A stretch of 64,000 nt of DNA from the NCBI GenBank assembly GCA_026936335.1, contig JAPMXV010000003.1, forward strand, positions 124,001 through 188,000, read 5' to 3'. A program made the translations under genes and the position numbers. A model generated the notes under the pieces. That model worked only from the letters and a program-made list of their open reading frames with translations, was not told the origin of the DNA and ran no database searches. Positions 4,395 through 38,506 of this stretch are shown here, piece by piece (positions within the stretch are counted from its first letter, which is position 1; every line of letters begins with the position of its first letter). The DNA is from Mantamonas sphyraenae STR306 (taxonomy: Eukaryota; Protista; CRuMs).

Positions 4395-5866
4395 TCATTT
4401 GGATTTTGACTGAGCATCAAGTGACCTCGCAGACGCCATTGGGAGCAACTTGCCGCTGGCAAAGGTGGGGCCTGGCACATGTGCCGAGAGAAACTGGACG
4501 AGCACAAAGATGTTGACGATGAAAAACAGGATGCCGGCAGACCAGACAGGGAGGAAGAAGTTGCGCGCTTGGAACTCGAGCTGATAGGCCATAGCAAGCC
4601 ACAGCAGCTGGGAGCCAAACCATGCGGCAAAAAGATAGGCGCCGCGGCGGGCCGATAGGAGGGAGACAGGGAGGACGAGCGGAAGCAGGGACAGGTACCA
4701 GATAAAGTACTGAACTGTGCACACCTTGTTGAAGGCGACAAAGACGAGGGTTTGACAAAACACCGCAAAGGTGATGTCCTTGTGGTACTTGTGAGCGAGG
4801 GCAAGGAGGAGGACAATCTGGGGCAGAAAGGCAAGGAGGCCCACGCCCGAGGGTCCACTCAGGTAAAGGGAGTAAAAGTAGACGGAGAAGTTGTGGCGAT
4901 GGTCGGTGCGCTCGATGTGATACAGATAGGTCTCGTAGAGGAACTGCCAACCGTAGATCCAATAGAGGAGGGCGGTCGTGAGGATGCAGACAGCAGCACT
5001 GAGCAGAGAAAAGACGACGCGGTCGCGGTTGAAGAAGGAACGCAGAGAGGAAGGCGAGGATGAAGTGGCAGGCTGGCTGCGATACTCGGGGCCGAAGAAA
5101 AACAGAAAGGCAGGCGCATACATGATGGGGTAAATCTTGAAATGGACAGAGAGGCCGTAAATGATGGCAGCTGGGACCACTTGGTGGTTGAACACAAAGT
5201 AGAGTGTGGAGGTGACCATGAGAGAGATGAGCGATTCGGCGTTGCCGCGAGTGGACACATTGACAGCCACAGGGTTGAAGAGCCACAGACACGTGTACAA
5301 GAGGGCATTGCGTTGCTGTTGAGCCAATTGGAGCTCAGGGGTGGACGCGGACGCGCTCTTGACGAGGGGCAGCCGTCGTTTGAGGATGGCGTAGATGCAG
5401 AGGCCGATCAGGAGGTCGTTGGCAGCAAAGAGGAGCTTGCCAAACACTTTGTGCACGTAAATATTGGGTAAAAGAAGCCAGGCCAGCAGCGGTGTGTAGC
5501 GGAAGGTGGCTCGTGTGTAAGGGGACAGCCCCTGAGCGACGAAGCGGGCGCCGTCTGTGAACACCTCGTAGTCGATGTCTGTGTACTTGACAGCGACTGT
5601 GCGAGGCCGCAGCAGCGCGGGTGGGGCAACAAAGAGTGGGCCGTTGTTGATTGGAGAACAGGCAACGCGGGTGGGGGGGGCGGGAATGGAGAGGGTGAAA
5701 GGATGTGGAGGTGGCAGGAGGAGGAGTGTGAGCGAGCGCGGCACATGTAGGACGAATGGCCAGTGCAAGGGTACGACGTACAGTTTGCATCTTGCCACTC
5801 GGCATACACAATTACAAGGAGACGTAGGAGGGCAGCAGCAAGGAAAACCTGCGTGGGAGACCACAT
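4395..5866 (-). CDS. PIGM: GPI mannosyltransferase 1
   Basis: Exons 5866-5782 and 5596-4395 give ...WQDANFAVKYTDIDYEVFTDGA, SPYTRATFRYTPLLA, STRGNAE, VHFKIYP, DHRHNFS, FNKVCTVQYF. Confidence 0.95.
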
Positions 5867-5948
5867 GAGAAGCGGTGGCAGGAAGCAAGTGGTTGGGTGT
5901 TCCAGGGCGCCGGATGATGCAGCGCTACACGAACGAGATCCCGGAGCG

Positions 5949-8900
5949 ATGCAGTCCAGAGAGCAGTTTGTAGATGCGCAACTCAAGTTGATTGAGCTGG
6001 AGCGGGACTCTGAAATGGAGGAGAGCGGCCTGCTGTTGGCAAACGCGAGCGCACGTGAGCTGGAGGCAAACGGGGTGGGGGTGGGCAAGCTGCGAGCTGC
6101 CGAAGTGCGTACAAACAGACTGGGTCGCACCGAAGTGCGCTTTGTGCGACAGTACAAGGGTGAGGACGGGGAACTAAGTCTGCCTGCACACAGAATCACC
6201 TCGGGGGACATTGTGAGCGTACGGCCGACGGCGTGGCTGACGGGCGGAGGCCCTGCGGCAGGAGAGGAGACATCTGCAGACGGTTTGACGGGAGTGGTGT
6301 ATCGTGTGAAGCCACACAGCATTGCGGTGTCATTTGACGAGTGGACGGAGTTTGCGGACGGATCGCTGGTGCTGACGAAGCTGGCGAACGACGTTACGTA
6401 CAAGAGGCTCAAGAACACCCTGCATGATTTGCGTGGATACAAAAACGGCCCTGCGCAGCGTGTGGTGGACGTTCTTTTTGGTGATGAGAAGCCAGAACAG
6501 AGCAGAAGCAGTGGAGGCGGGGGAGGCGGCGGCGAAAGCGTTGAGGGCCAATCCTCTGGCGGGTGGAAGGCGTTGAACCCGAGGTTGAACGAGACCCAAG
6601 TAGAGGCCATTGACTTTGCACTGCGCAGCAAGGACGTGTCTCTGATCCACGGGCCCCCCGGAACAGGCAAGACGACGACTGTGGTCGAGCTGATTGCGCA
6701 GTGTGTTGCTCGAGGCGACAAGGTGCTTGCGTGTGCGCCTTCCAATGTGGCGGTGGACAATCTGGTGGAACGGCTGGCGAGTGCGCCGTACTCTGTGTCG
6801 CTGGTGCGGCTGGGCCACCCTGCAAGGCTGTTGCCGTCGGTCCTGAAGCACTGCCTGGATGCACAGCTGGAGATGGAGGATGGGAGTGAGTTGGTGGACG
6901 ACATCAGGCAAGAGCTTCAGGAGATCCAAGCCCAGCTGAGTGGAGCCAAGCGGAAGCCAAAGCAGCAGTCGTACGGAGAGATCAAGGCAAAGCGCAGAGA
7001 ATTGCGAAAGGAGATGCGGGAACGGAGCGACGCTGTGATGCAGCGTGTGCTCTCATCTGCGGACGTGTTTCTTTGCACATGCACGGGTGCAGCGGGGCGA
7101 GATGCTTTGGCAGCCGCCAAACTTGTGGGCGCGTTTGATGTGTGTGTGATCGACGAGGCAGCACAAGCGCTGGAGGCCAGCTGCTGGATTCCAATGCTCT
7201 TGTGTAAGCGCACAGTGCTTGCAGGCGATCATTTGCAGCTGCCTCCGACGATCAGCTCGAGCGAGGCAGCAGCGGGCGGATTGGACGTGACGATGTTTGA
7301 TCGAGTGCAGGAGATGTACGGGGAAAGCGCAGTGCGCATGCTGACGATGCAGTACCGCATGCACACAAAGATCATGGAGTGGAGCAGCAAAGAGATGTAC
7401 GACGGAGCGCTTGTGGCGCACGAAAGCGTGGCGAACCACTTGCTGAAGGACTTGGATGGGCAGGTGGAAGACAACGAGGACACACACAATGCACTGGTGA
7501 TGGTAGACACTACAGGGTCCGACATGCTGGAACAGAGTGGGACAGGTGAGCGTGCCGGTGGAGGGAGCAGCAGCGGGAGCGGCAGCGGGCGAGGCAGCCT
7601 TCTGAACGCGGAAACCAAATCCAATGCCGGAGAGGTGGACCTTGTGGCGGAACAGGTGGAAGCTTTGGTGCAAGCAGGAGTGGCAGCGAGTGACGTGGGA
7701 GTGATCACGCCGTACAACGGGCAAGTGCAGCTGCTGCGCGAGCGTATTGGAAGCGTGCACGGAGAGGTGGAGATCAGCAGTGTGGATGGATTCCAGGGCA
7801 GAGAGAAAGAGGCCATTGTGATCAGCATGGTGCGATCGAACGACAAGCAGGAGATTGGATTTTTGAGCGACCGACGCAGGATGAACGTGGCGATCACCCG
7901 CGCGCGGCGGTACTGTTGTGTCATTGGCAACTTTGGGATGTGTTCGATGGAGCCGTTCCTGGAGCGACTGAGCAACTATTTGATGGACAACGCGGACTAC
8001 CGTTCGTTTATGATGTACGAGAGCGCAGAGACGCTGGCGGCCGTGGTTGGGGACCAGAGTTCGCAGGGACAGGAGCACAAGAAAGGGCTTGTAGAAGAGG
8101 CGAAAGCAGAGAATGCTCGCCAAGCGGAGATGCGCAAGGGCCAAGCGCGCGCTGAGGAGAACAAAAACAAGCGCGAGCAATTTGGGGCGGTGCTGCGATC
8201 GTATGCAGATGGGAAGCGAAGCGGGTTGCCGATTGAGGGGATTGAGCGTGCAGAGCACAGGCCGACTGTGTCGAAAGAGGGTATCCTGTCGTTTCCGCCA
8301 GCGCTGAATTCGTACGAACGGCGGCTTGTGCACCAACTGTGTGAGGAGCTGAGGCTGCGACATGAGAGTGCAGGCGAGGAAGGAAGCAGGCACATTGAGG
8401 TGTGGGGAGAAGCAGAGGCGGCTCAGATGGAAGACGCTGTGGTGGTCGTTGAAGTGGAGACGGAGGTGGAGACTGCGGCGACGGAAGAGGAGACAGCAAT
8501 TGCACAGCAGGATGGCCAAAGCGGTGGCAAAGGAGGTTTGGGTGGAGTGAAACGTGCACTGACGCCCGGAGACATCATGCGCATGAACATGGCCGAGGGG
8601 ATGGCTCCGCACGGAGGGGTGTCGAGCTCGACGAGCACGTCCGGGTCACAGGAGAAGGGCAAGGACAAGGGCAAGGAAAAGGAGAGTGGAAAAGGCAAGG
8701 GAAAGGGAAAGAGCAAGGGAAAGGGAAAGGGCAAGAAGGGCAAGAAGAATGCCGGAGAGAAGCAGTTTGATGCACTGATGGCAGAGGATGACGAGATGGC
8801 ACTGCTGGACTCGCTGATTGCCGCCAAGAACCAATGTGCGGTGAAGGGATGCAAAGAAAAGGTGGTTGTGATGAACCGCACATGTGACTATTGTCAGGCG

Positions 8901-32879: not shown

Positions 32880-34331
32880 TCACTTGCACCCGCAGCCCTT
32901 TTTCTTCTCCCCATCCTCGTAGGCGATGATCTGAATCGACCCACCGCCTCCCGAGCTGCCTCCCCTGGACGATTTCTCCTCGTCCGCAGGAAGTGCTTTT
33001 GTGATCTCTACAAACACGTTCTCCACATTGATGTCGTCCTTTGCGCTGGTCTCGAAAAAGATGGCGCCGATTTCGTCCGCATACTCTTGGCCCACCTTGG
33101 TCTCCACGTCTCGCTGCTCCTCCAGGTCGCATTTGTTCCCTGCCATGGCAATGACGATGTTTTCTGGCCCGATTGTCCGTAGTTCCTTGACCCATTTTTG
33201 CAGGGTTTCGAACGAGTCCTGTGCGTGCATAAAGATGGCAACGGTCAGCAAGTGGCCAACAACCAGGCCCACTTCTCTCCTATTCCTTTCCCCTCGTGCA
33301 CATTGGCCAATCCTCGGATCTCATAATACTTTTCGACTCATCGCGTGAAGATCACAAGGACCAACGCTCTCCCGCTGTGCCCCACTGCGGACCACCGACA
33401 CTCGCCGGCCGATCCGCGGCACAGAAGGAGTGCGTCGACGCCCATATCAACGTGCTGTGTACCGAGGCGGGCCGTGCGTTTCCTGGAAGGCTGGTCGGGT
33501 GCGACGGAGCCGCAGAGCAGCTCCGCTGCGCCGGCTTGGCCCCCATGTCCCGCACAGTCCTCTCGGAACACGTCTGCATGCTGGACAGGCGCACTACACG
33601 CTCAAGTTGCAAGTTTTCGTCATAGGAAGGCATGTGGACAGCCAGTGCTGCCGTCGAGGCGCGCTCGCCAACGGGATTTTCCCTCCTGCGCTCACCTTGT
33701 CCGTAATATCATACACAACGATCGCAGCTGCCGCGCCGCGATAGTACATGGGGGCCAGACCCTGGTATTTCTCCTGTGCGGGGTGTGTGCGCATTCTGTC
33801 AGCCCGTGGCTCCCGTGTAGGGACAACGTCTTGCTCGCGGAATTGCCCGCCTCGCCCAAACGTACCTGACCCGCCGTGTCCTGTGAACATGGACCGAACG
33901 TCGCCCGCCGGCACGACGGTGAAGTGCATGGCAAAGAGCACGTGTGTGTGCGTGCGTGTGTGTCGTGATGGTGGGTTCGTGTCAGCACACTGCGCTGCAG
34001 CCCAGGTTGCGGGGAAGGAGGAGGGAAGCTCACCCAAATCTGGAACTTGATTGTGGTGTCGCCCACCACCAAAGACTTGGACAGGAAAGAGGCCCCGATG
34101 GTGGGTTCGTTGAACTGTTTAAATGTGTCCGACACAAACCGCAGCACCAGCGACGTCTTGCCCGTGCCCGAGTCACCCAAAAGCACAAGCTTAATCTCCC
34201 GGGTCAGCGTCTCCAGGTCACTGGACGACGCTGGCGCCTTGTACGAGTCGACCTGTGTGCCATCACGCTTCCATGTCAGCAACGCAATGTGCAACCAAGA
34301 CGCAATTCTGCACCTCCAAGCAACGCACCAT
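32880..34331 (-). CDS. RAB22: Rab5-subfamily GTPase, Rab22/Rab31-like
   Basis: GDSGTGKT, PTIGASF, IW|DTAGQ|EKY, LAPMYYRG, GPENIVIAMAGNKCD, ETSAK, CGCK tail; four introns, first coding exon is ATG only. Confidence 0.88.
33311..33627 (-). ncRNA. Intronic box C/D guide RNA, SNORD97/SCARNA97-like (predicted tRNA-Met C34 2'-O-methylation guide)
   Basis: Terminal TCCT/AGGA stem; C box ATGACGA (33623-33617); D' TTGA; C' GCGATGA (33344-33338); guide ATTATGAGAT then D box CCGA (33317-33314); lies in the 477-nt Rab intron, sense to the host gene. Confidence 0.7.
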
Positions 34332-37300: not shown

Positions 37301-38506
37301 CGTTCATGCCAGTGGAGTTTGTGGTGCGTGCCAGGGAGCCGACCTTGAACAGCTCATACATGGTGTCGAGGTTGGACGCCGGGTAGCGGCACTCGGCCTC
37401 GTGGGCGTACTTCTTCTTGTTCTTGACACCGCGGTTGACAAACTTTGTCTTTTTGTGTTTGTCTTCCGTCACACGGATCTGTGAGGCGAGGCGGCGGACG
37501 CCGAGTGAGTCGGGGGCCGGTAGAGGGAACAGGATGCGAGCAAGCCTGCGTTTTTCCGCGACCCACACGCACGTGCGCAACATACGTTCATGTTCTCCAC
37601 GGAACAGGCCTTGCGTGAGGAAAGCAAATCGACAATGCGTTCGTTGTAGATTTCCAGGTAGCTCATGTTGATCTGCATCTGCACGCCCTCGCGTTGCATC
37701 TCTTCGTCGAGCGAGCCAAAGATGCGCGGTACAATGCCCCAGTGCTTGCGCACCTCTTCGTCAGACAGGCCCTCCGCCTCCACCTGTGTAGGAGAGGGAA
37801 CAGTCAAGGGGTCAAATATGCCGAGTACGTCACCCGGGGTGTCAGTCAATCAGGAGGGCGGTTTGGGAAGTGTCGATCACCAGCGACCCTGAGCGTTCGT
37901 CGTTTCGGGTGTGCTTGTCACTCAACGTACGTCTTTAAAGTCTTTGCCGGTCATGGTGTACGTTTTGCCACTTCCCGTCTGTCCGTAGGCAAACAGACAG
38001 GTGTTCAGGCCTGGCGATGAGGGGGAACAAGTGGGGTGTGAGCCAGAAGTCATGTTGCAAGCAAACGGCTACCACGCAGAAAAACCTAGGCACCCAGCAC
38101 GGGCAGGGCTTCACTGTCGGCGCTGCTCACCTGAGTAGGCACCCTCCACGAGGGGCTTGCCCATCTTCTGGTAGACAATCTCCTGGTCGGCCCACTTGGG
38201 GTGGTTCCAGCCAGGCTCGCCGTCGGCTGTGGTGAGATGCGTCCACAACGCGTGGGTAACCGAAAACTGCGTGCCTCGGCCAGGACCTTCGCGGTCGACC
38301 TGCACGATGTCACCGTCACCGTCTTCCTTGTCGTACATCTGCACACACATGTAGTACTTGCCGTCGTCATACTGCTCCAGGGAAGCAGCGTGCGACTTTT
38401 TCTGGTACAGATCCCTCTCGGCTGCCGACGCATTTGGCCCGGGGGGTTTGGGCATCTTTTTCGACGGCCGTACACGTACGCCAATGCGAATGGATTGCGT
38501 GGGCAT
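34392..38506 (-). CDS. Kinesin-3-like motor with FHA, C2-like domain, coiled coil and CaaX tail
   Basis: [34 protein letters not shown]; PLLVNL...HCVF (FHA); KATGLP...TTNPEFDY (C2); ends CVVS; three introns. Confidence 0.88.
34434..34495. repeat. (AGC/AGT)n coding trinucleotide repeat (poly-Ser)
   Basis: In the kinesin tail; similar tracts at ~40941-40972 and ~45610-45660. (CA)n tracts occur in introns at ~15930, 23446, 30581 and 59535. Confidence 0.9.

What the first reader, a model, noticed from the sequence alone, without database searches (positions are those of the whole stretch)
33311..33627. Hidden intronic C/D-box RNA predicted to guide tRNA-Met wobble methylation
Seen: the Rab22 intron 33695-33219 is about 3-4 times longer than most introns here and reads TCCT-ATGACGA ... 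TTGA ... GCGATGA ... ATTATGAGAT-CCGA-GGA. Boxes C and D both change U to C at the positions that face each other in the K-turn. Known: human SNORD97 and SCARNA97 guide Cm34 of elongator tRNA-Met with (from memory) AUUAUGAGA before box D, and archaea have an equivalent guide. The guide here pairs with UCUCAUAAU and the D+5 rule lands on C34. Inference: a deeply conserved tRNA-modifying guide RNA in a protist, in a new host gene.
Basis: partly seen in the sequence, partly recalled or inferred. Interest (0 to 1): 0.82.

Follow-up and report, generated by a model that had tools for sequence, protein, structure and literature searches.

The report
Probable giant tRNA-Met guide snoRNA
A long intron of a Rab GTPase gene in this protist very probably encodes an unusually large box C/D guide RNA, with slightly off-consensus boxes, aimed at the wobble cytidine of elongator methionine tRNA, the job done by SNORD97/SCARNA97 in humans; neither the RNA nor the methylation has yet been shown.

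Summary
The 477-nt intron (33695-33219, minus strand) carries UCC-U-AUGACGA ... UUGA ... GCGAUGA ... AUUAUGAGAU-CCGA-GGA at the stated coordinates.

The genome's only two elongator tRNA-Met(CAU) genes read GGUCUCAUAAUCC. The guide forms 9 Watson-Crick pairs plus 1 G.U with them, and the fifth nucleotide before box D faces C34.

Chance is a poor explanation:
- The 9-mer occurs 13 times in 25 Mb, and only this copy has a D-like box in register.
- A Markov null expects about 12 full C-D'-C'-D architectures per genome, and about 4e-6 that also carry this guide.

Supporting points:
- With boxes and guides held open, the 257-nt insert folds as a closed domain whose stem directly flanks D' and C'.
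- The same genome holds another giant C/D RNA (about 390 nt) with a 13-bp guide to the 18S U27/snR74 site.
- Canonical SNORD97-like RNAs from metagenomes share a 5' motif with this one.

Against:
- Both terminal boxes deviate from consensus, giving C.C instead of U.U.
- The terminal stem is only 3 bp.
- There is no Rfam match, no RNA data and no close relative.
- A canonical snoRNA elsewhere in the genome also pairs with tRNA-Met C34.

Verdict: a real guide at about 0.6. The scan had noted this stretch twice, and a similar giant C/D RNA on another contig.

The parts
33696..33773 (-). Rab22-like coding exon upstream of the host intron (EKYQGLAPMYYRGAAAAIVVYDITDK)
   Evidence: Read. It is in frame with the DTAGQ microexon at 33880-33866 and with the last exon.
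33219..33695 (-). Host intron, 477 nt, GT..AG, single copy in the genome
   Evidence: The gene's other introns are 153 and 92 nt.
32880..33218 (-). Last coding exon of the Rab22-like gene (112 codons plus stop)
   Evidence: translation. In one search the named matches, at 47-48% identity, are Rab-22A proteins; the best match overall is an unnamed transcriptome protein at 62% identity.
33311..33627 (-). Proposed box C/D RNA, 317 nt, sense to the host gene
33625..33627 (-). 5' strand of the terminal stem (UCC). It is followed by bulge nucleotide U 33624.
   Evidence: It pairs with GGA at 33313-33311. Extension of the stem beyond these pairs is not significant.
33617..33623 (-). Box C variant AUGACGA (consensus RUGAUGA, with U5 changed to C)
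   Evidence: Both GA dinucleotides are kept.
33606..33616 (-). D' antisense element AAACUUGCAAC (11 nt), orphan
   Evidence: No rRNA match of 8 bp or more. The best tRNA match is weak.
33602..33605 (-). Box D' UUGA. It lies inside the motif AACUUGAGCG, which is shared with environmental SNORD97-like RNAs.
33345..33601 (-). 257-nt G+C-rich insert between D' and C'. It forms two long hairpin domains closed by GCGUG (33601-33597) pairing with CACGC (33347-33343).
   Evidence: Constrained fold. Fold z-scores are -3.9 and -3.1.
33338..33344 (-). Box C' GCGAUGA (core GAUGA at 33342-33338)
   Evidence: It lies 20 nt upstream of box D.
33318..33337 (-). D antisense element GUCGAAAAGUAUUAUGAGAU. Nucleotides 33327-33318 pair with tRNA-Met G30 to U39, and G 33322 faces C34.
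33314..33317 (-). Box D variant CCGA (consensus CUGA, with U2 changed to C)
33311..33313 (-). 3' strand of the terminal stem (GGA)
33244..33248 (-). Branch-point-like CUGAC. It lies 26 nt upstream of the 3' splice site and about 65 nt downstream of the RNA's 3' end.
   Evidence: Read. This is an inference from the consensus only.

Best explanation
The long third intron of the Rab22-like gene encodes a 317-nt box C/D guide RNA.

Proposed mechanism (inferred, not shown):
1. After splicing and debranching, exonucleases trim the intron back to a terminal k-turn. That k-turn is formed by box C (AUGACGA), box D (CCGA) and the UCC/GGA stem.
2. The k-turn has a 3-nt bulge, tandem G.A/A.G pairs, a C.C pair where U.U normally sits, and then G-C and A-U pairs.
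3. Snu13, Nop58/Nop56 and fibrillarin assemble on it.
4. The 10 nucleotides before box D pair with G30 to U39 of elongator tRNA-Met(CAU), so fibrillarin 2'-O-methylates C34. SNORD97 and SCARNA97 do this in human cells.

D' and C' are brought face to face by a stem that closes a 257-nt folded insert. The D' guide has no recognised target.

Shown here: the anatomy, the target sequence, the register, the improbability of chance, and the precedent for giant C/D RNAs in this genome. Inferred: accumulation of the RNA, assembly of the particle, and the methylation itself.
For: - Motifs, register and target are confirmed.
- Among 40 distinct tRNAs and the rRNAs, the best D-guide match is elongator tRNA-Met at C34.
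- Only this copy of the 9-mer has a D-like box in register. No canonical AUUAUGAGAN-CUGA exists elsewhere in the genome. The one UUAUGAGAA-CUGA hit belongs to the snoRNA on contig C41.
- The full architecture was found once in 359 kb of real sequence, and that hit is this locus. The Markov null gives about 12 per genome, times 3e-7 for the 9-mer.
- The two deviations fall exactly on the mutually facing 3b:3n pair (PMC5689011). All four GA dinucleotides, the G-C pair, C' and the guide are intact. This is the pattern expected under constraint rather than decay.
- A constrained fold closes the insert with a stem that abuts D' and C'.
- Precedent: on L077, an AUGAUGA box, a 13-bp guide to 18S A28, about 330 nt of folded insert, and CUGA with a 4-bp stem.
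- Human SCARNA97 is 216 nt, and the family is intronic and reported from vertebrates, insects, a tunicate and flowering plants (PMC6601510).
- Three canonical environmental SNORD97-like RNAs are 144 to 193 nt long. They share a motif just after box C that also occurs at 33608, against a background of 2.5e-5 per nt.
- The intron is single copy, so it is not a repeat.
Against: - Neither terminal box matches its consensus.
- The terminal stem is 3 bp, and its extension is no better than background.
- The duplex is only 9 Watson-Crick pairs plus 1 G.U, and tRNA-Thr(CGU) C34 pairs nearly as well.
- There is no Rfam hit.
- No RNA run was listed and no close relative exists for a conservation test.
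- The insert is not pyrimidine-rich, unlike the human and environmental relatives. Its fold z-score is matched by 3 of 24 random window segments.
- No UGACGA/CCGA pairing was seen among 27 CCGA hits in metagenomes.
- The 5' motif was noticed after the fact.
- A canonical snoRNA on C41 could already serve tRNA-Met C34.
Confidence: 0.6

Rival explanations
1. It is an inactive relic. The locus was once a SNORD97-type gene, the U-to-C changes in boxes C and D stopped RNP assembly, and tRNA-Met C34 is now served, if at all, by the canonical snoRNA on contig C41.
For: - Both terminal boxes are off consensus, and the stem is only 3 bp.
- The guide has not tracked the local tRNA stem: CCUG in the tRNA faces AAGU in the guide, so pairing stops at 10 bp.
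- The C41 snoRNA has canonical boxes, a 6-bp stem and 11 contiguous pairs with the elongator tRNA.
Against: - Two random hits among 11 box positions would fall on the facing pair about 1 time in 55. Both being U to C is rarer still.
- Every other constrained position is intact: the GA dinucleotides, the G-C pair, C', D', the 10-nt guide and the closing stem.
- Humans keep two redundant guides for this site (PMC6601510).
Confidence: 0.15
2. It is a real C/D-type or otherwise structured intronic RNA, but tRNA-Met C34 is not its main business. The functional part could be the 257-nt folded domain or the orphan D' element, or the target could be another RNA such as tRNA-Thr(CGU) C34.
For: - tRNA-Thr(CGU) gives 8 Watson-Crick pairs plus 2 G.U at C34.
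- The folded insert makes up 80% of the RNA, with a fold z-score of -3.9 for the whole element.
- The giant U27-type RNA on L077 also carries a large folded domain of unknown role.
Against: - The guide core is identical to that of canonical SNORD97-like RNAs from the environment.
- The best match over all tRNAs and rRNAs is tRNA-Met C34.
- The two giant inserts share no sequence similarity.
Confidence: 0.13
3. It is a chance constellation. A long, G+C-rich, self-folding intron happens to contain degenerate box-like strings and a 9-mer complementary to a tRNA loop.
For: - Relaxed terminal motifs are common, at 71 per Mb and 22 in 359 kb of real sequence.
- The boxes were read with one mismatch each.
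- The extended stem and the fold of the insert are not exceptional.
- The scan read very many windows.
Against: - The joint expectation for the full architecture plus this guide in register is about 4e-6 per genome. It is about 1e-2 if any of roughly 200 known methylation sites had been accepted.
- The location is a sense-strand intron, and the longest intron of the gene.
- A closing stem abuts D' and C'.
- The shared 5' motif has an uncorrected p of about 5e-4.
Confidence: 0.12

Closest known systems
Human SNORD97 and SCARNA97 (SNORD133), Vitali and Kiss 2019, PMC6601510
   Same: - Intron-encoded, in the sense orientation.
- The guide upstream of box D selects C34 of elongator tRNA-Met(CAU).
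- The RNAs are unusually long for C/D RNAs (SCARNA97 is 216 nt) because of a large internal region.
- The target arm GUCUCAUAAUC is conserved from animals to plants, and also here.
   Different: - The boxes here are AUGACGA and CCGA rather than the consensus.
- The RNA is 317 nt.
- The internal region is G+C-rich and folded, not pyrimidine-rich and unstructured.
- The host gene is a Rab22-like GTPase, not EIF4G2 or LARP4.
- Sequence homology is not demonstrable.
- Pairing is 10 bp.
Environmental SNORD97-like RNAs found here (L113:329-494 +, L120:668-868 -, L153:1335-1486 -)
   Same: - They share the C'-spacer-AUUAUGAGAY-D module.
- They are 144 to 193 nt long.
- They share the motif A[AU]CU[CU](U)NAG[CU]G just after box C.
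- L113 also has U at the guide position next to box D.
   Different: - They have perfect GUGAUGA and CUGA boxes and 6-bp terminal stems.
- Two of the three have pyrimidine-rich interiors.
- Their organisms are unknown.
Archaeal box C/D sRNA guiding Cm34 of elongator tRNA-Met (Joardar et al. 2011, as cited in PMC6601510)
   Same: The same target nucleotide and the same guide logic.
   Different: It is a compact archaeal sRNA of about 60 nt with 12-nt spacers, and it is not intronic in a protein-coding gene. I did not compare it directly.
Giant U27/snR74-type C/D RNA of the same genome (L077 minus strand, contig C29, RanBD-gene intron)
   Same: - It is intronic.
- The order is C, guide, D', about 330 nt of folded insert, C', guide, D.
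- It is about 390 nt long, with a fold z-score of -4.2.
   Different: - Its C and D boxes are canonical.
- It has a 13-bp guide to a universally methylated 18S site.
- Its insert shares no sequence similarity with this one.
snR60/Z15-type snoRNA of the same genome (L043:413-519, contig C41, MTHFR-like gene intron)
   Same: Its D guide also places C34 of tRNA-Met at the fifth position.
   Different: - It is 107 nt long, with a CUGA D box, an AGGAUGA C box and a 6-bp stem.
- It pairs best with the initiator tRNA (16 contiguous pairs) and less well with the elongator (11 pairs).
- Its D' guide is a standard rRNA guide.

Membership tests
Box C/D guide RNA (snoRNA/scaRNA) | 5' box C RUGAUGA | tested here: not met
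   The box reads AUGACGA, with C at position 5. R, U and both GA dinucleotides are kept.
Box C/D guide RNA (snoRNA/scaRNA) | 3' box D CUGA | tested here: not met
   The box reads CCGA, with C at position 2. C1, G3 and A4 are kept.
Box C/D guide RNA (snoRNA/scaRNA) | Terminal k-turn geometry: a stem, a 3-nt bulge, tandem G.A/A.G pairs, a non-Watson-Crick 3b:3n pair, then a G-C pair | tested here: met
   The elements are UCC/GGA, bulge UAU, G.A, A.G, C.C, G-C and A-U (rule from PMC5689011). The stem is only 3 bp, and its extension is not significant.
Box C/D guide RNA (snoRNA/scaRNA) | Internal D' and C' boxes at guide-length spacing | tested here: met
   UUGA lies 11 nt after box C, and GCGAUGA lies 20 nt before box D. 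A closing stem abuts both.
Box C/D guide RNA (snoRNA/scaRNA) | Antisense element of about 10 bp or more ending next to box D, with the fifth nucleotide opposite the target | tested here: met
   There are 9 Watson-Crick pairs plus 1 G.U with elongator tRNA-Met, and the fifth nucleotide faces C34. This is at the short end of the range.
Box C/D guide RNA (snoRNA/scaRNA) | Stable RNA bound by Snu13, Nop56, Nop58 and fibrillarin | not testable with these tools
   No RNA run was listed, so read laying could not be used.
SNORD97/SCARNA97 | D-box guide selecting C34 of elongator tRNA-Met(CAU) | tested here: met
SNORD97/SCARNA97 | Intron-encoded, in the sense orientation | tested here: met
SNORD97/SCARNA97 | Detectable sequence or profile homology | tested here: inconclusive
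   There is no Rfam match, but three canonical environmental relatives do not match either. A shared 5' motif has an uncorrected p of about 5e-4. The pairwise score against L113 gives p of about 0.04.
SNORD97/SCARNA97 | Long pyrimidine-rich internal region that cannot fold (PMC6601510, Supplemental Fig. S2 legend) | tested here: not met
   The interior is 49% pyrimidine and 65% G+C, and it is strongly folded.
SNORD97/SCARNA97 | Cm34 present on the tRNA and dependent on the guide | not testable with these tools
   This needs RiboMeth-seq, primer extension or mass spectrometry.

The most novel reading that the evidence does not exclude
This lineage may divide the methylation of the methionine anticodon between two guides. 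One would be a giant C/D RNA specific for the elongator tRNA, with a C.C k-turn and a 257-nt folded domain. The other would be an ordinary snR60-type snoRNA whose second guide has 16 contiguous pairs with the initiator tRNA. That would be the first snoRNA-guided modification proposed for an initiator tRNA. Large folded inserts between D' and C' would then be a lineage-wide functional feature of C/D RNAs, for example for localisation, as in SCARNA97.
Probability: 0.2. Interest if true: 0.75.

Novelty: new variant of a known kind. Interest (0 to 1): 0.55.

Why it matters
snoRNA-guided tRNA methylation in eukaryotes rests on one experimentally tested case, human SNORD97/SCARNA97. Its candidate homologues have been reported only in animals and flowering plants.

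A working guide in a distant, unidentified protist would support an ancient origin for this tRNA-directed use of C/D RNPs, continuous with archaea.

It would also provide:
- a natural test of whether a C.C pair can replace the near-invariant U.U of the C/D k-turn;
- a pair of 300 to 400-nt C/D RNAs in which to ask what large inserts between D' and C' do;
- a system with two candidate guides, for initiator and elongator tRNA-Met, in which to study how guides tell apart nearly identical anticodon loops.

Tried and rejected
- Rfam scans of the window, the intron and the 3' module gave nothing relevant. This proved uninformative, because canonical environmental relatives also fail to match.
- Expression could not be tested. 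No RNA run was listed, so read laying was never used.
- Conservation could not be tested. The exon-only protein search found nothing closer than 62% identity. The look-up by the neighbouring kinesin found no record. The kinesin homology search found nothing closer than 35% identity.
- Whole-genome searches with the LSU and SSU rRNA families failed. I located the rDNA by a short pattern instead.
- The first two patterns for the U27-type guide missed it. A third pattern found it.
- The repeat or transposon explanation is rejected, because the intron is single copy.
- The antisense tRNA fragment explanation is rejected. The flanks of the 9-mer do not resemble the tRNA complement (read by eye).
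- An extended terminal stem is not significant: p is 0.36 against shuffles and 0.15 against genomic pairs.
- The two giant inserts share no similarity.
- No independent UGACGA/CCGA covariation was found among 27 metagenomic CCGA hits.
- A shorter RNA using GCGAUGA as box C is rejected, because no stem flanks it and the guide would be the hairpin loop (read by eye).
- The H/ACA and miRNA readings of the insert have only chance-level Rfam scores.
- The human guide string could not be verified in text.

Full report
**What is in the sequence**

On the minus strand, a Rab22-like gene has a 15-nt DTAGQ microexon (33880-33866), a 78-nt exon (33773-33696) and a last exon (33218-32883). These are separated by GT..AG introns of 153, 92 and 477 nt. 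The last exon alone matches Rab-22A proteins.

- UCC-U-AUGACGA at 33627-33617
- UUGA at 33605-33602
- GCGAUGA at 33344-33338
- AUUAUGAGAU at 33327-33318
- CCGA at 33317-33314
- GGA at 33313-33311

**The target**

The window holds no tRNA gene. In the whole assembly (25.06 Mb, 78 contigs, about 58% G+C), TCTCATAAT occurs 13 times. Two of these lie in identical 102-nt tRNA genes on contig C54 that ARAGORN in bacterial mode missed. Infernal aligns them as tRNA with the loop CUCAUAA and a 31-nt insertion in the D region. Their D loop, variable loop and T arm are those of animal and plant elongator tRNA-Met (compare with the alignment). A DNA search found no further copy.

The guide pairs G30 (G.U) and U31 to U39, and its fifth nucleotide before box D faces C34. 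Against 40 distinct tRNAs and the 18S, 5.8S and 28S rRNAs of this genome, this is the best match of the D guide. tRNA-Thr(CGU) C34 is a near second. The D' element has no convincing target.

**Is it chance?**

The ten other non-tRNA copies of the 9-mer are mostly YYE codons, and none has a D-like box in register. No canonical AUUAUGAGAN-CUGA exists elsewhere in the genome.

I defined a relaxed architecture that just admits this candidate:
- a 3-bp stem;
- N-R-UGA-N-GA as box C;
- NUGA 9 to 22 nt downstream as D';
- GAUGA 9 to 25 nt before C-N-GA as C' and D;
- the complementary 3-bp stem;
- total length 60 to 450 nt.

In 359 kb of real sequence from this genome (both strands), the terminal part alone occurs 22 times. 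The full architecture occurs once, and that hit is this locus. In 20 Mb of third-order Markov sequence, the terminal part occurs 1,428 times, the full architecture 5 times and the 9-mer 6 times.

This gives about 12 chance architectures per genome. About 4e-6 of them would also carry this guide in register. If any of roughly 200 known methylation sites had been accepted, the figure is about 1e-2. It is lower again for a sense-strand intron. Pure chance is therefore unlikely.

**The two deviant boxes**

In the C/D k-turn, box C position 5 and box D position 2 form the 3b:3n pair, which is normally U:U (PMC5689011). Here both are C.

Everything else needed for the k-turn is present: the 3-nt bulge (UAU), G.A, A.G, G-C and A-U. 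Two random substitutions among 11 box positions would fall on this one pair about 1 time in 55. The pattern therefore looks constrained rather than decayed. It is not proof, however, because U.C or C.U might be tolerated as well. I also found no second example among 27 metagenomic CCGA hits.

**The insert**

Free folding gives a z-score of -3.9 for the whole element and -3.1 for the insert. Three of 24 random window segments reach that level, so the score by itself says little.

With the boxes and guides held single-stranded, as they would be in a particle, the minimum-energy fold closes the insert with GCGUG/CACGC. This stem sits immediately next to D' and the GAUGA core of C', and it encloses two long hairpins. 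That is the topology expected for a C/D RNA whose D'-C' loop has been expanded. The intron is single copy.

**A precedent in the same genome**

I found it on contig C29 (L077, minus strand), in an intron of a gene with a RanBD domain. Its parts, in order, are:
- box C AUGAUGA;
- a 13-bp Watson-Crick guide to 18S A28 with D' CUUA;
- about 330 nt that fold with a z-score of -4.2;
- a C'-like UUGAAGA;
- CUGA followed by AUCG, which pairs with CGAU before box C.

No nearer D box is present. The two inserts share no sequence similarity. Giant C/D RNAs therefore exist in this organism.

**A second tRNA-Met guide**

The only UUAUGAGNN-CUGA in the genome belongs to a 107-nt snoRNA in an MTHFR-like intron on contig C41 (L043:413-519). 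It has a 6-bp stem, box C AGGAUGA, CUGA for both D' and D, and a D' guide of the snR60/Z15 type.

Its D guide pairs as follows, each time with C34 at the fifth position:
- initiator tRNA-Met (A1:U72, A54, A60): 16 contiguous pairs, 13 Watson-Crick plus 3 G.U;
- elongator tRNA-Met: 11 contiguous pairs;
- 28S rRNA: only 9 pairs.

The window RNA pairs with the initiator over only 7 bp. The two guides may therefore be specialised, or they may be redundant as in humans.

**Comparison with known RNAs**

SNORD97 and SCARNA97 are intronic, long (SCARNA97 is 216 nt), and guide Cm34 of elongator tRNA-Met. Candidate homologues were reported in vertebrates, insects, Ciona and flowering plants, and archaea use C/D RNPs for the same site (PMC6601510).

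One metagenome scan for GAUGA-N6-16-AUUAUGAGAY-CYGA returned at least 120 stretches, mostly coding or chance. Three of them have GUGAUGA, CUGA, 6-bp terminal stems and lengths of 144 to 193 nt. Two of the three have pyrimidine-rich interiors.

The three share a motif just after box C, A[AU]CU[CU](U)NAG[CU]G. A pattern written from those three alone hits the window three times in 128 kb, one of them at 33608, directly after the proposed box C. This suggests homology of the 5' module, but I noticed it after the fact. None of the three matches Rfam, so the Rfam blank for the window says nothing.

**Limits**

No RNA run was listed. No close relative is available, and the organism remains unidentified. 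Its nearest protein matches are an unnamed transcriptome and animal proteins. Expression, particle assembly and Cm34 are all untested.

**Verdict**

| Reading | Probability |
|---|---|
| Functional SNORD97-type guide of unusual build | about 0.6 |
| Inactive relic | 0.15 |
| Real RNA with another role | 0.13 |
| Chance | 0.12 |

Noticed in passing
L043:413-519 (+), which is G000 contig C41:81886-81992: A canonical 107-nt C/D snoRNA sits in an MTHFR-like gene intron. Its D' guide is of the snR60/Z15 type, against 28S A1023. Its D guide, GCCUUCGGGUUAUGAGAA-CUGA, forms 16 contiguous pairs with the initiator tRNA-Met (L031:1500-1575) and 11 with the elongator, with C34 at the fifth position each time. 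To my knowledge, a guide for an initiator tRNA has not been described.
   Followed up: partly
L077 minus strand (G000 contig C29:481801-483011), about positions 570-966 of the reverse complement: A giant C/D RNA of about 390 nt lies in a RanBD-gene intron. It has box C AUGAUGA, a 13-bp guide to 18S A28 (the U27/snR74 site) with D' CUUA, about 330 nt of folded insert (z -4.2), and CUGA with a 4-bp terminal stem. Its D guide has no clear target.
   Followed up: partly
L009:142-243 and L010:142-243 (G000 contig C54:420319-420420 and 426057-426158): The only two elongator tRNA-Met(CAU) genes carry an identical insertion of about 29 to 31 nt in the D arm, after about position 22. The insertion contains a UUCG-capped hairpin, and T-run terminators follow both genes. 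This would be an intron at a non-canonical position, which is rare in nuclear tRNA genes. I did not establish a bulge-helix-bulge motif.
   Followed up: partly
L063:51-124 and 272-345 (G000 contig C30:470057-470351): Two tandem copies of an odd tRNA with anticodon CAU have G at position 37, A1:U72 and A54. These are initiator-like features without the G-C run in the anticodon stem.
   Followed up: no
L113:329-494 (+), L120:668-868 (-), L153:1335-1486 (-): Three environmental contigs carry canonical SNORD97-like C/D RNAs of 144 to 193 nt. L120 and L153 share AUCUUUYAGCGG right after box C although their contigs have 33% and 77% G+C. L113 also has a weak SNORA35-like H/ACA match at 2167-2287.
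   Followed up: partly
window 38014-38134 (+): A weak C/D-like hit: GCGAUGA ... CUGA, 121 nt, a 5-bp stem and a 10-bp match to 28S G1791. It may be chance in G+C-rich sequence.
   Followed up: no
window 33866-33880 (-): A 15-nt microexon encodes DTAGQ of the Rab switch II region, between introns of 153 and 92 nt.
   Followed up: partly
L071 and L072 (G000 contig C78:5000-17500); also contig C40: rDNA units of about 10.8 kb. In L071, 18S is at 5282-7093, 5.8S at 7427-7580 and 28S starts at 8197. The 28S continues to L072:1809, for 3,613 nt in all.
   Followed up: partly
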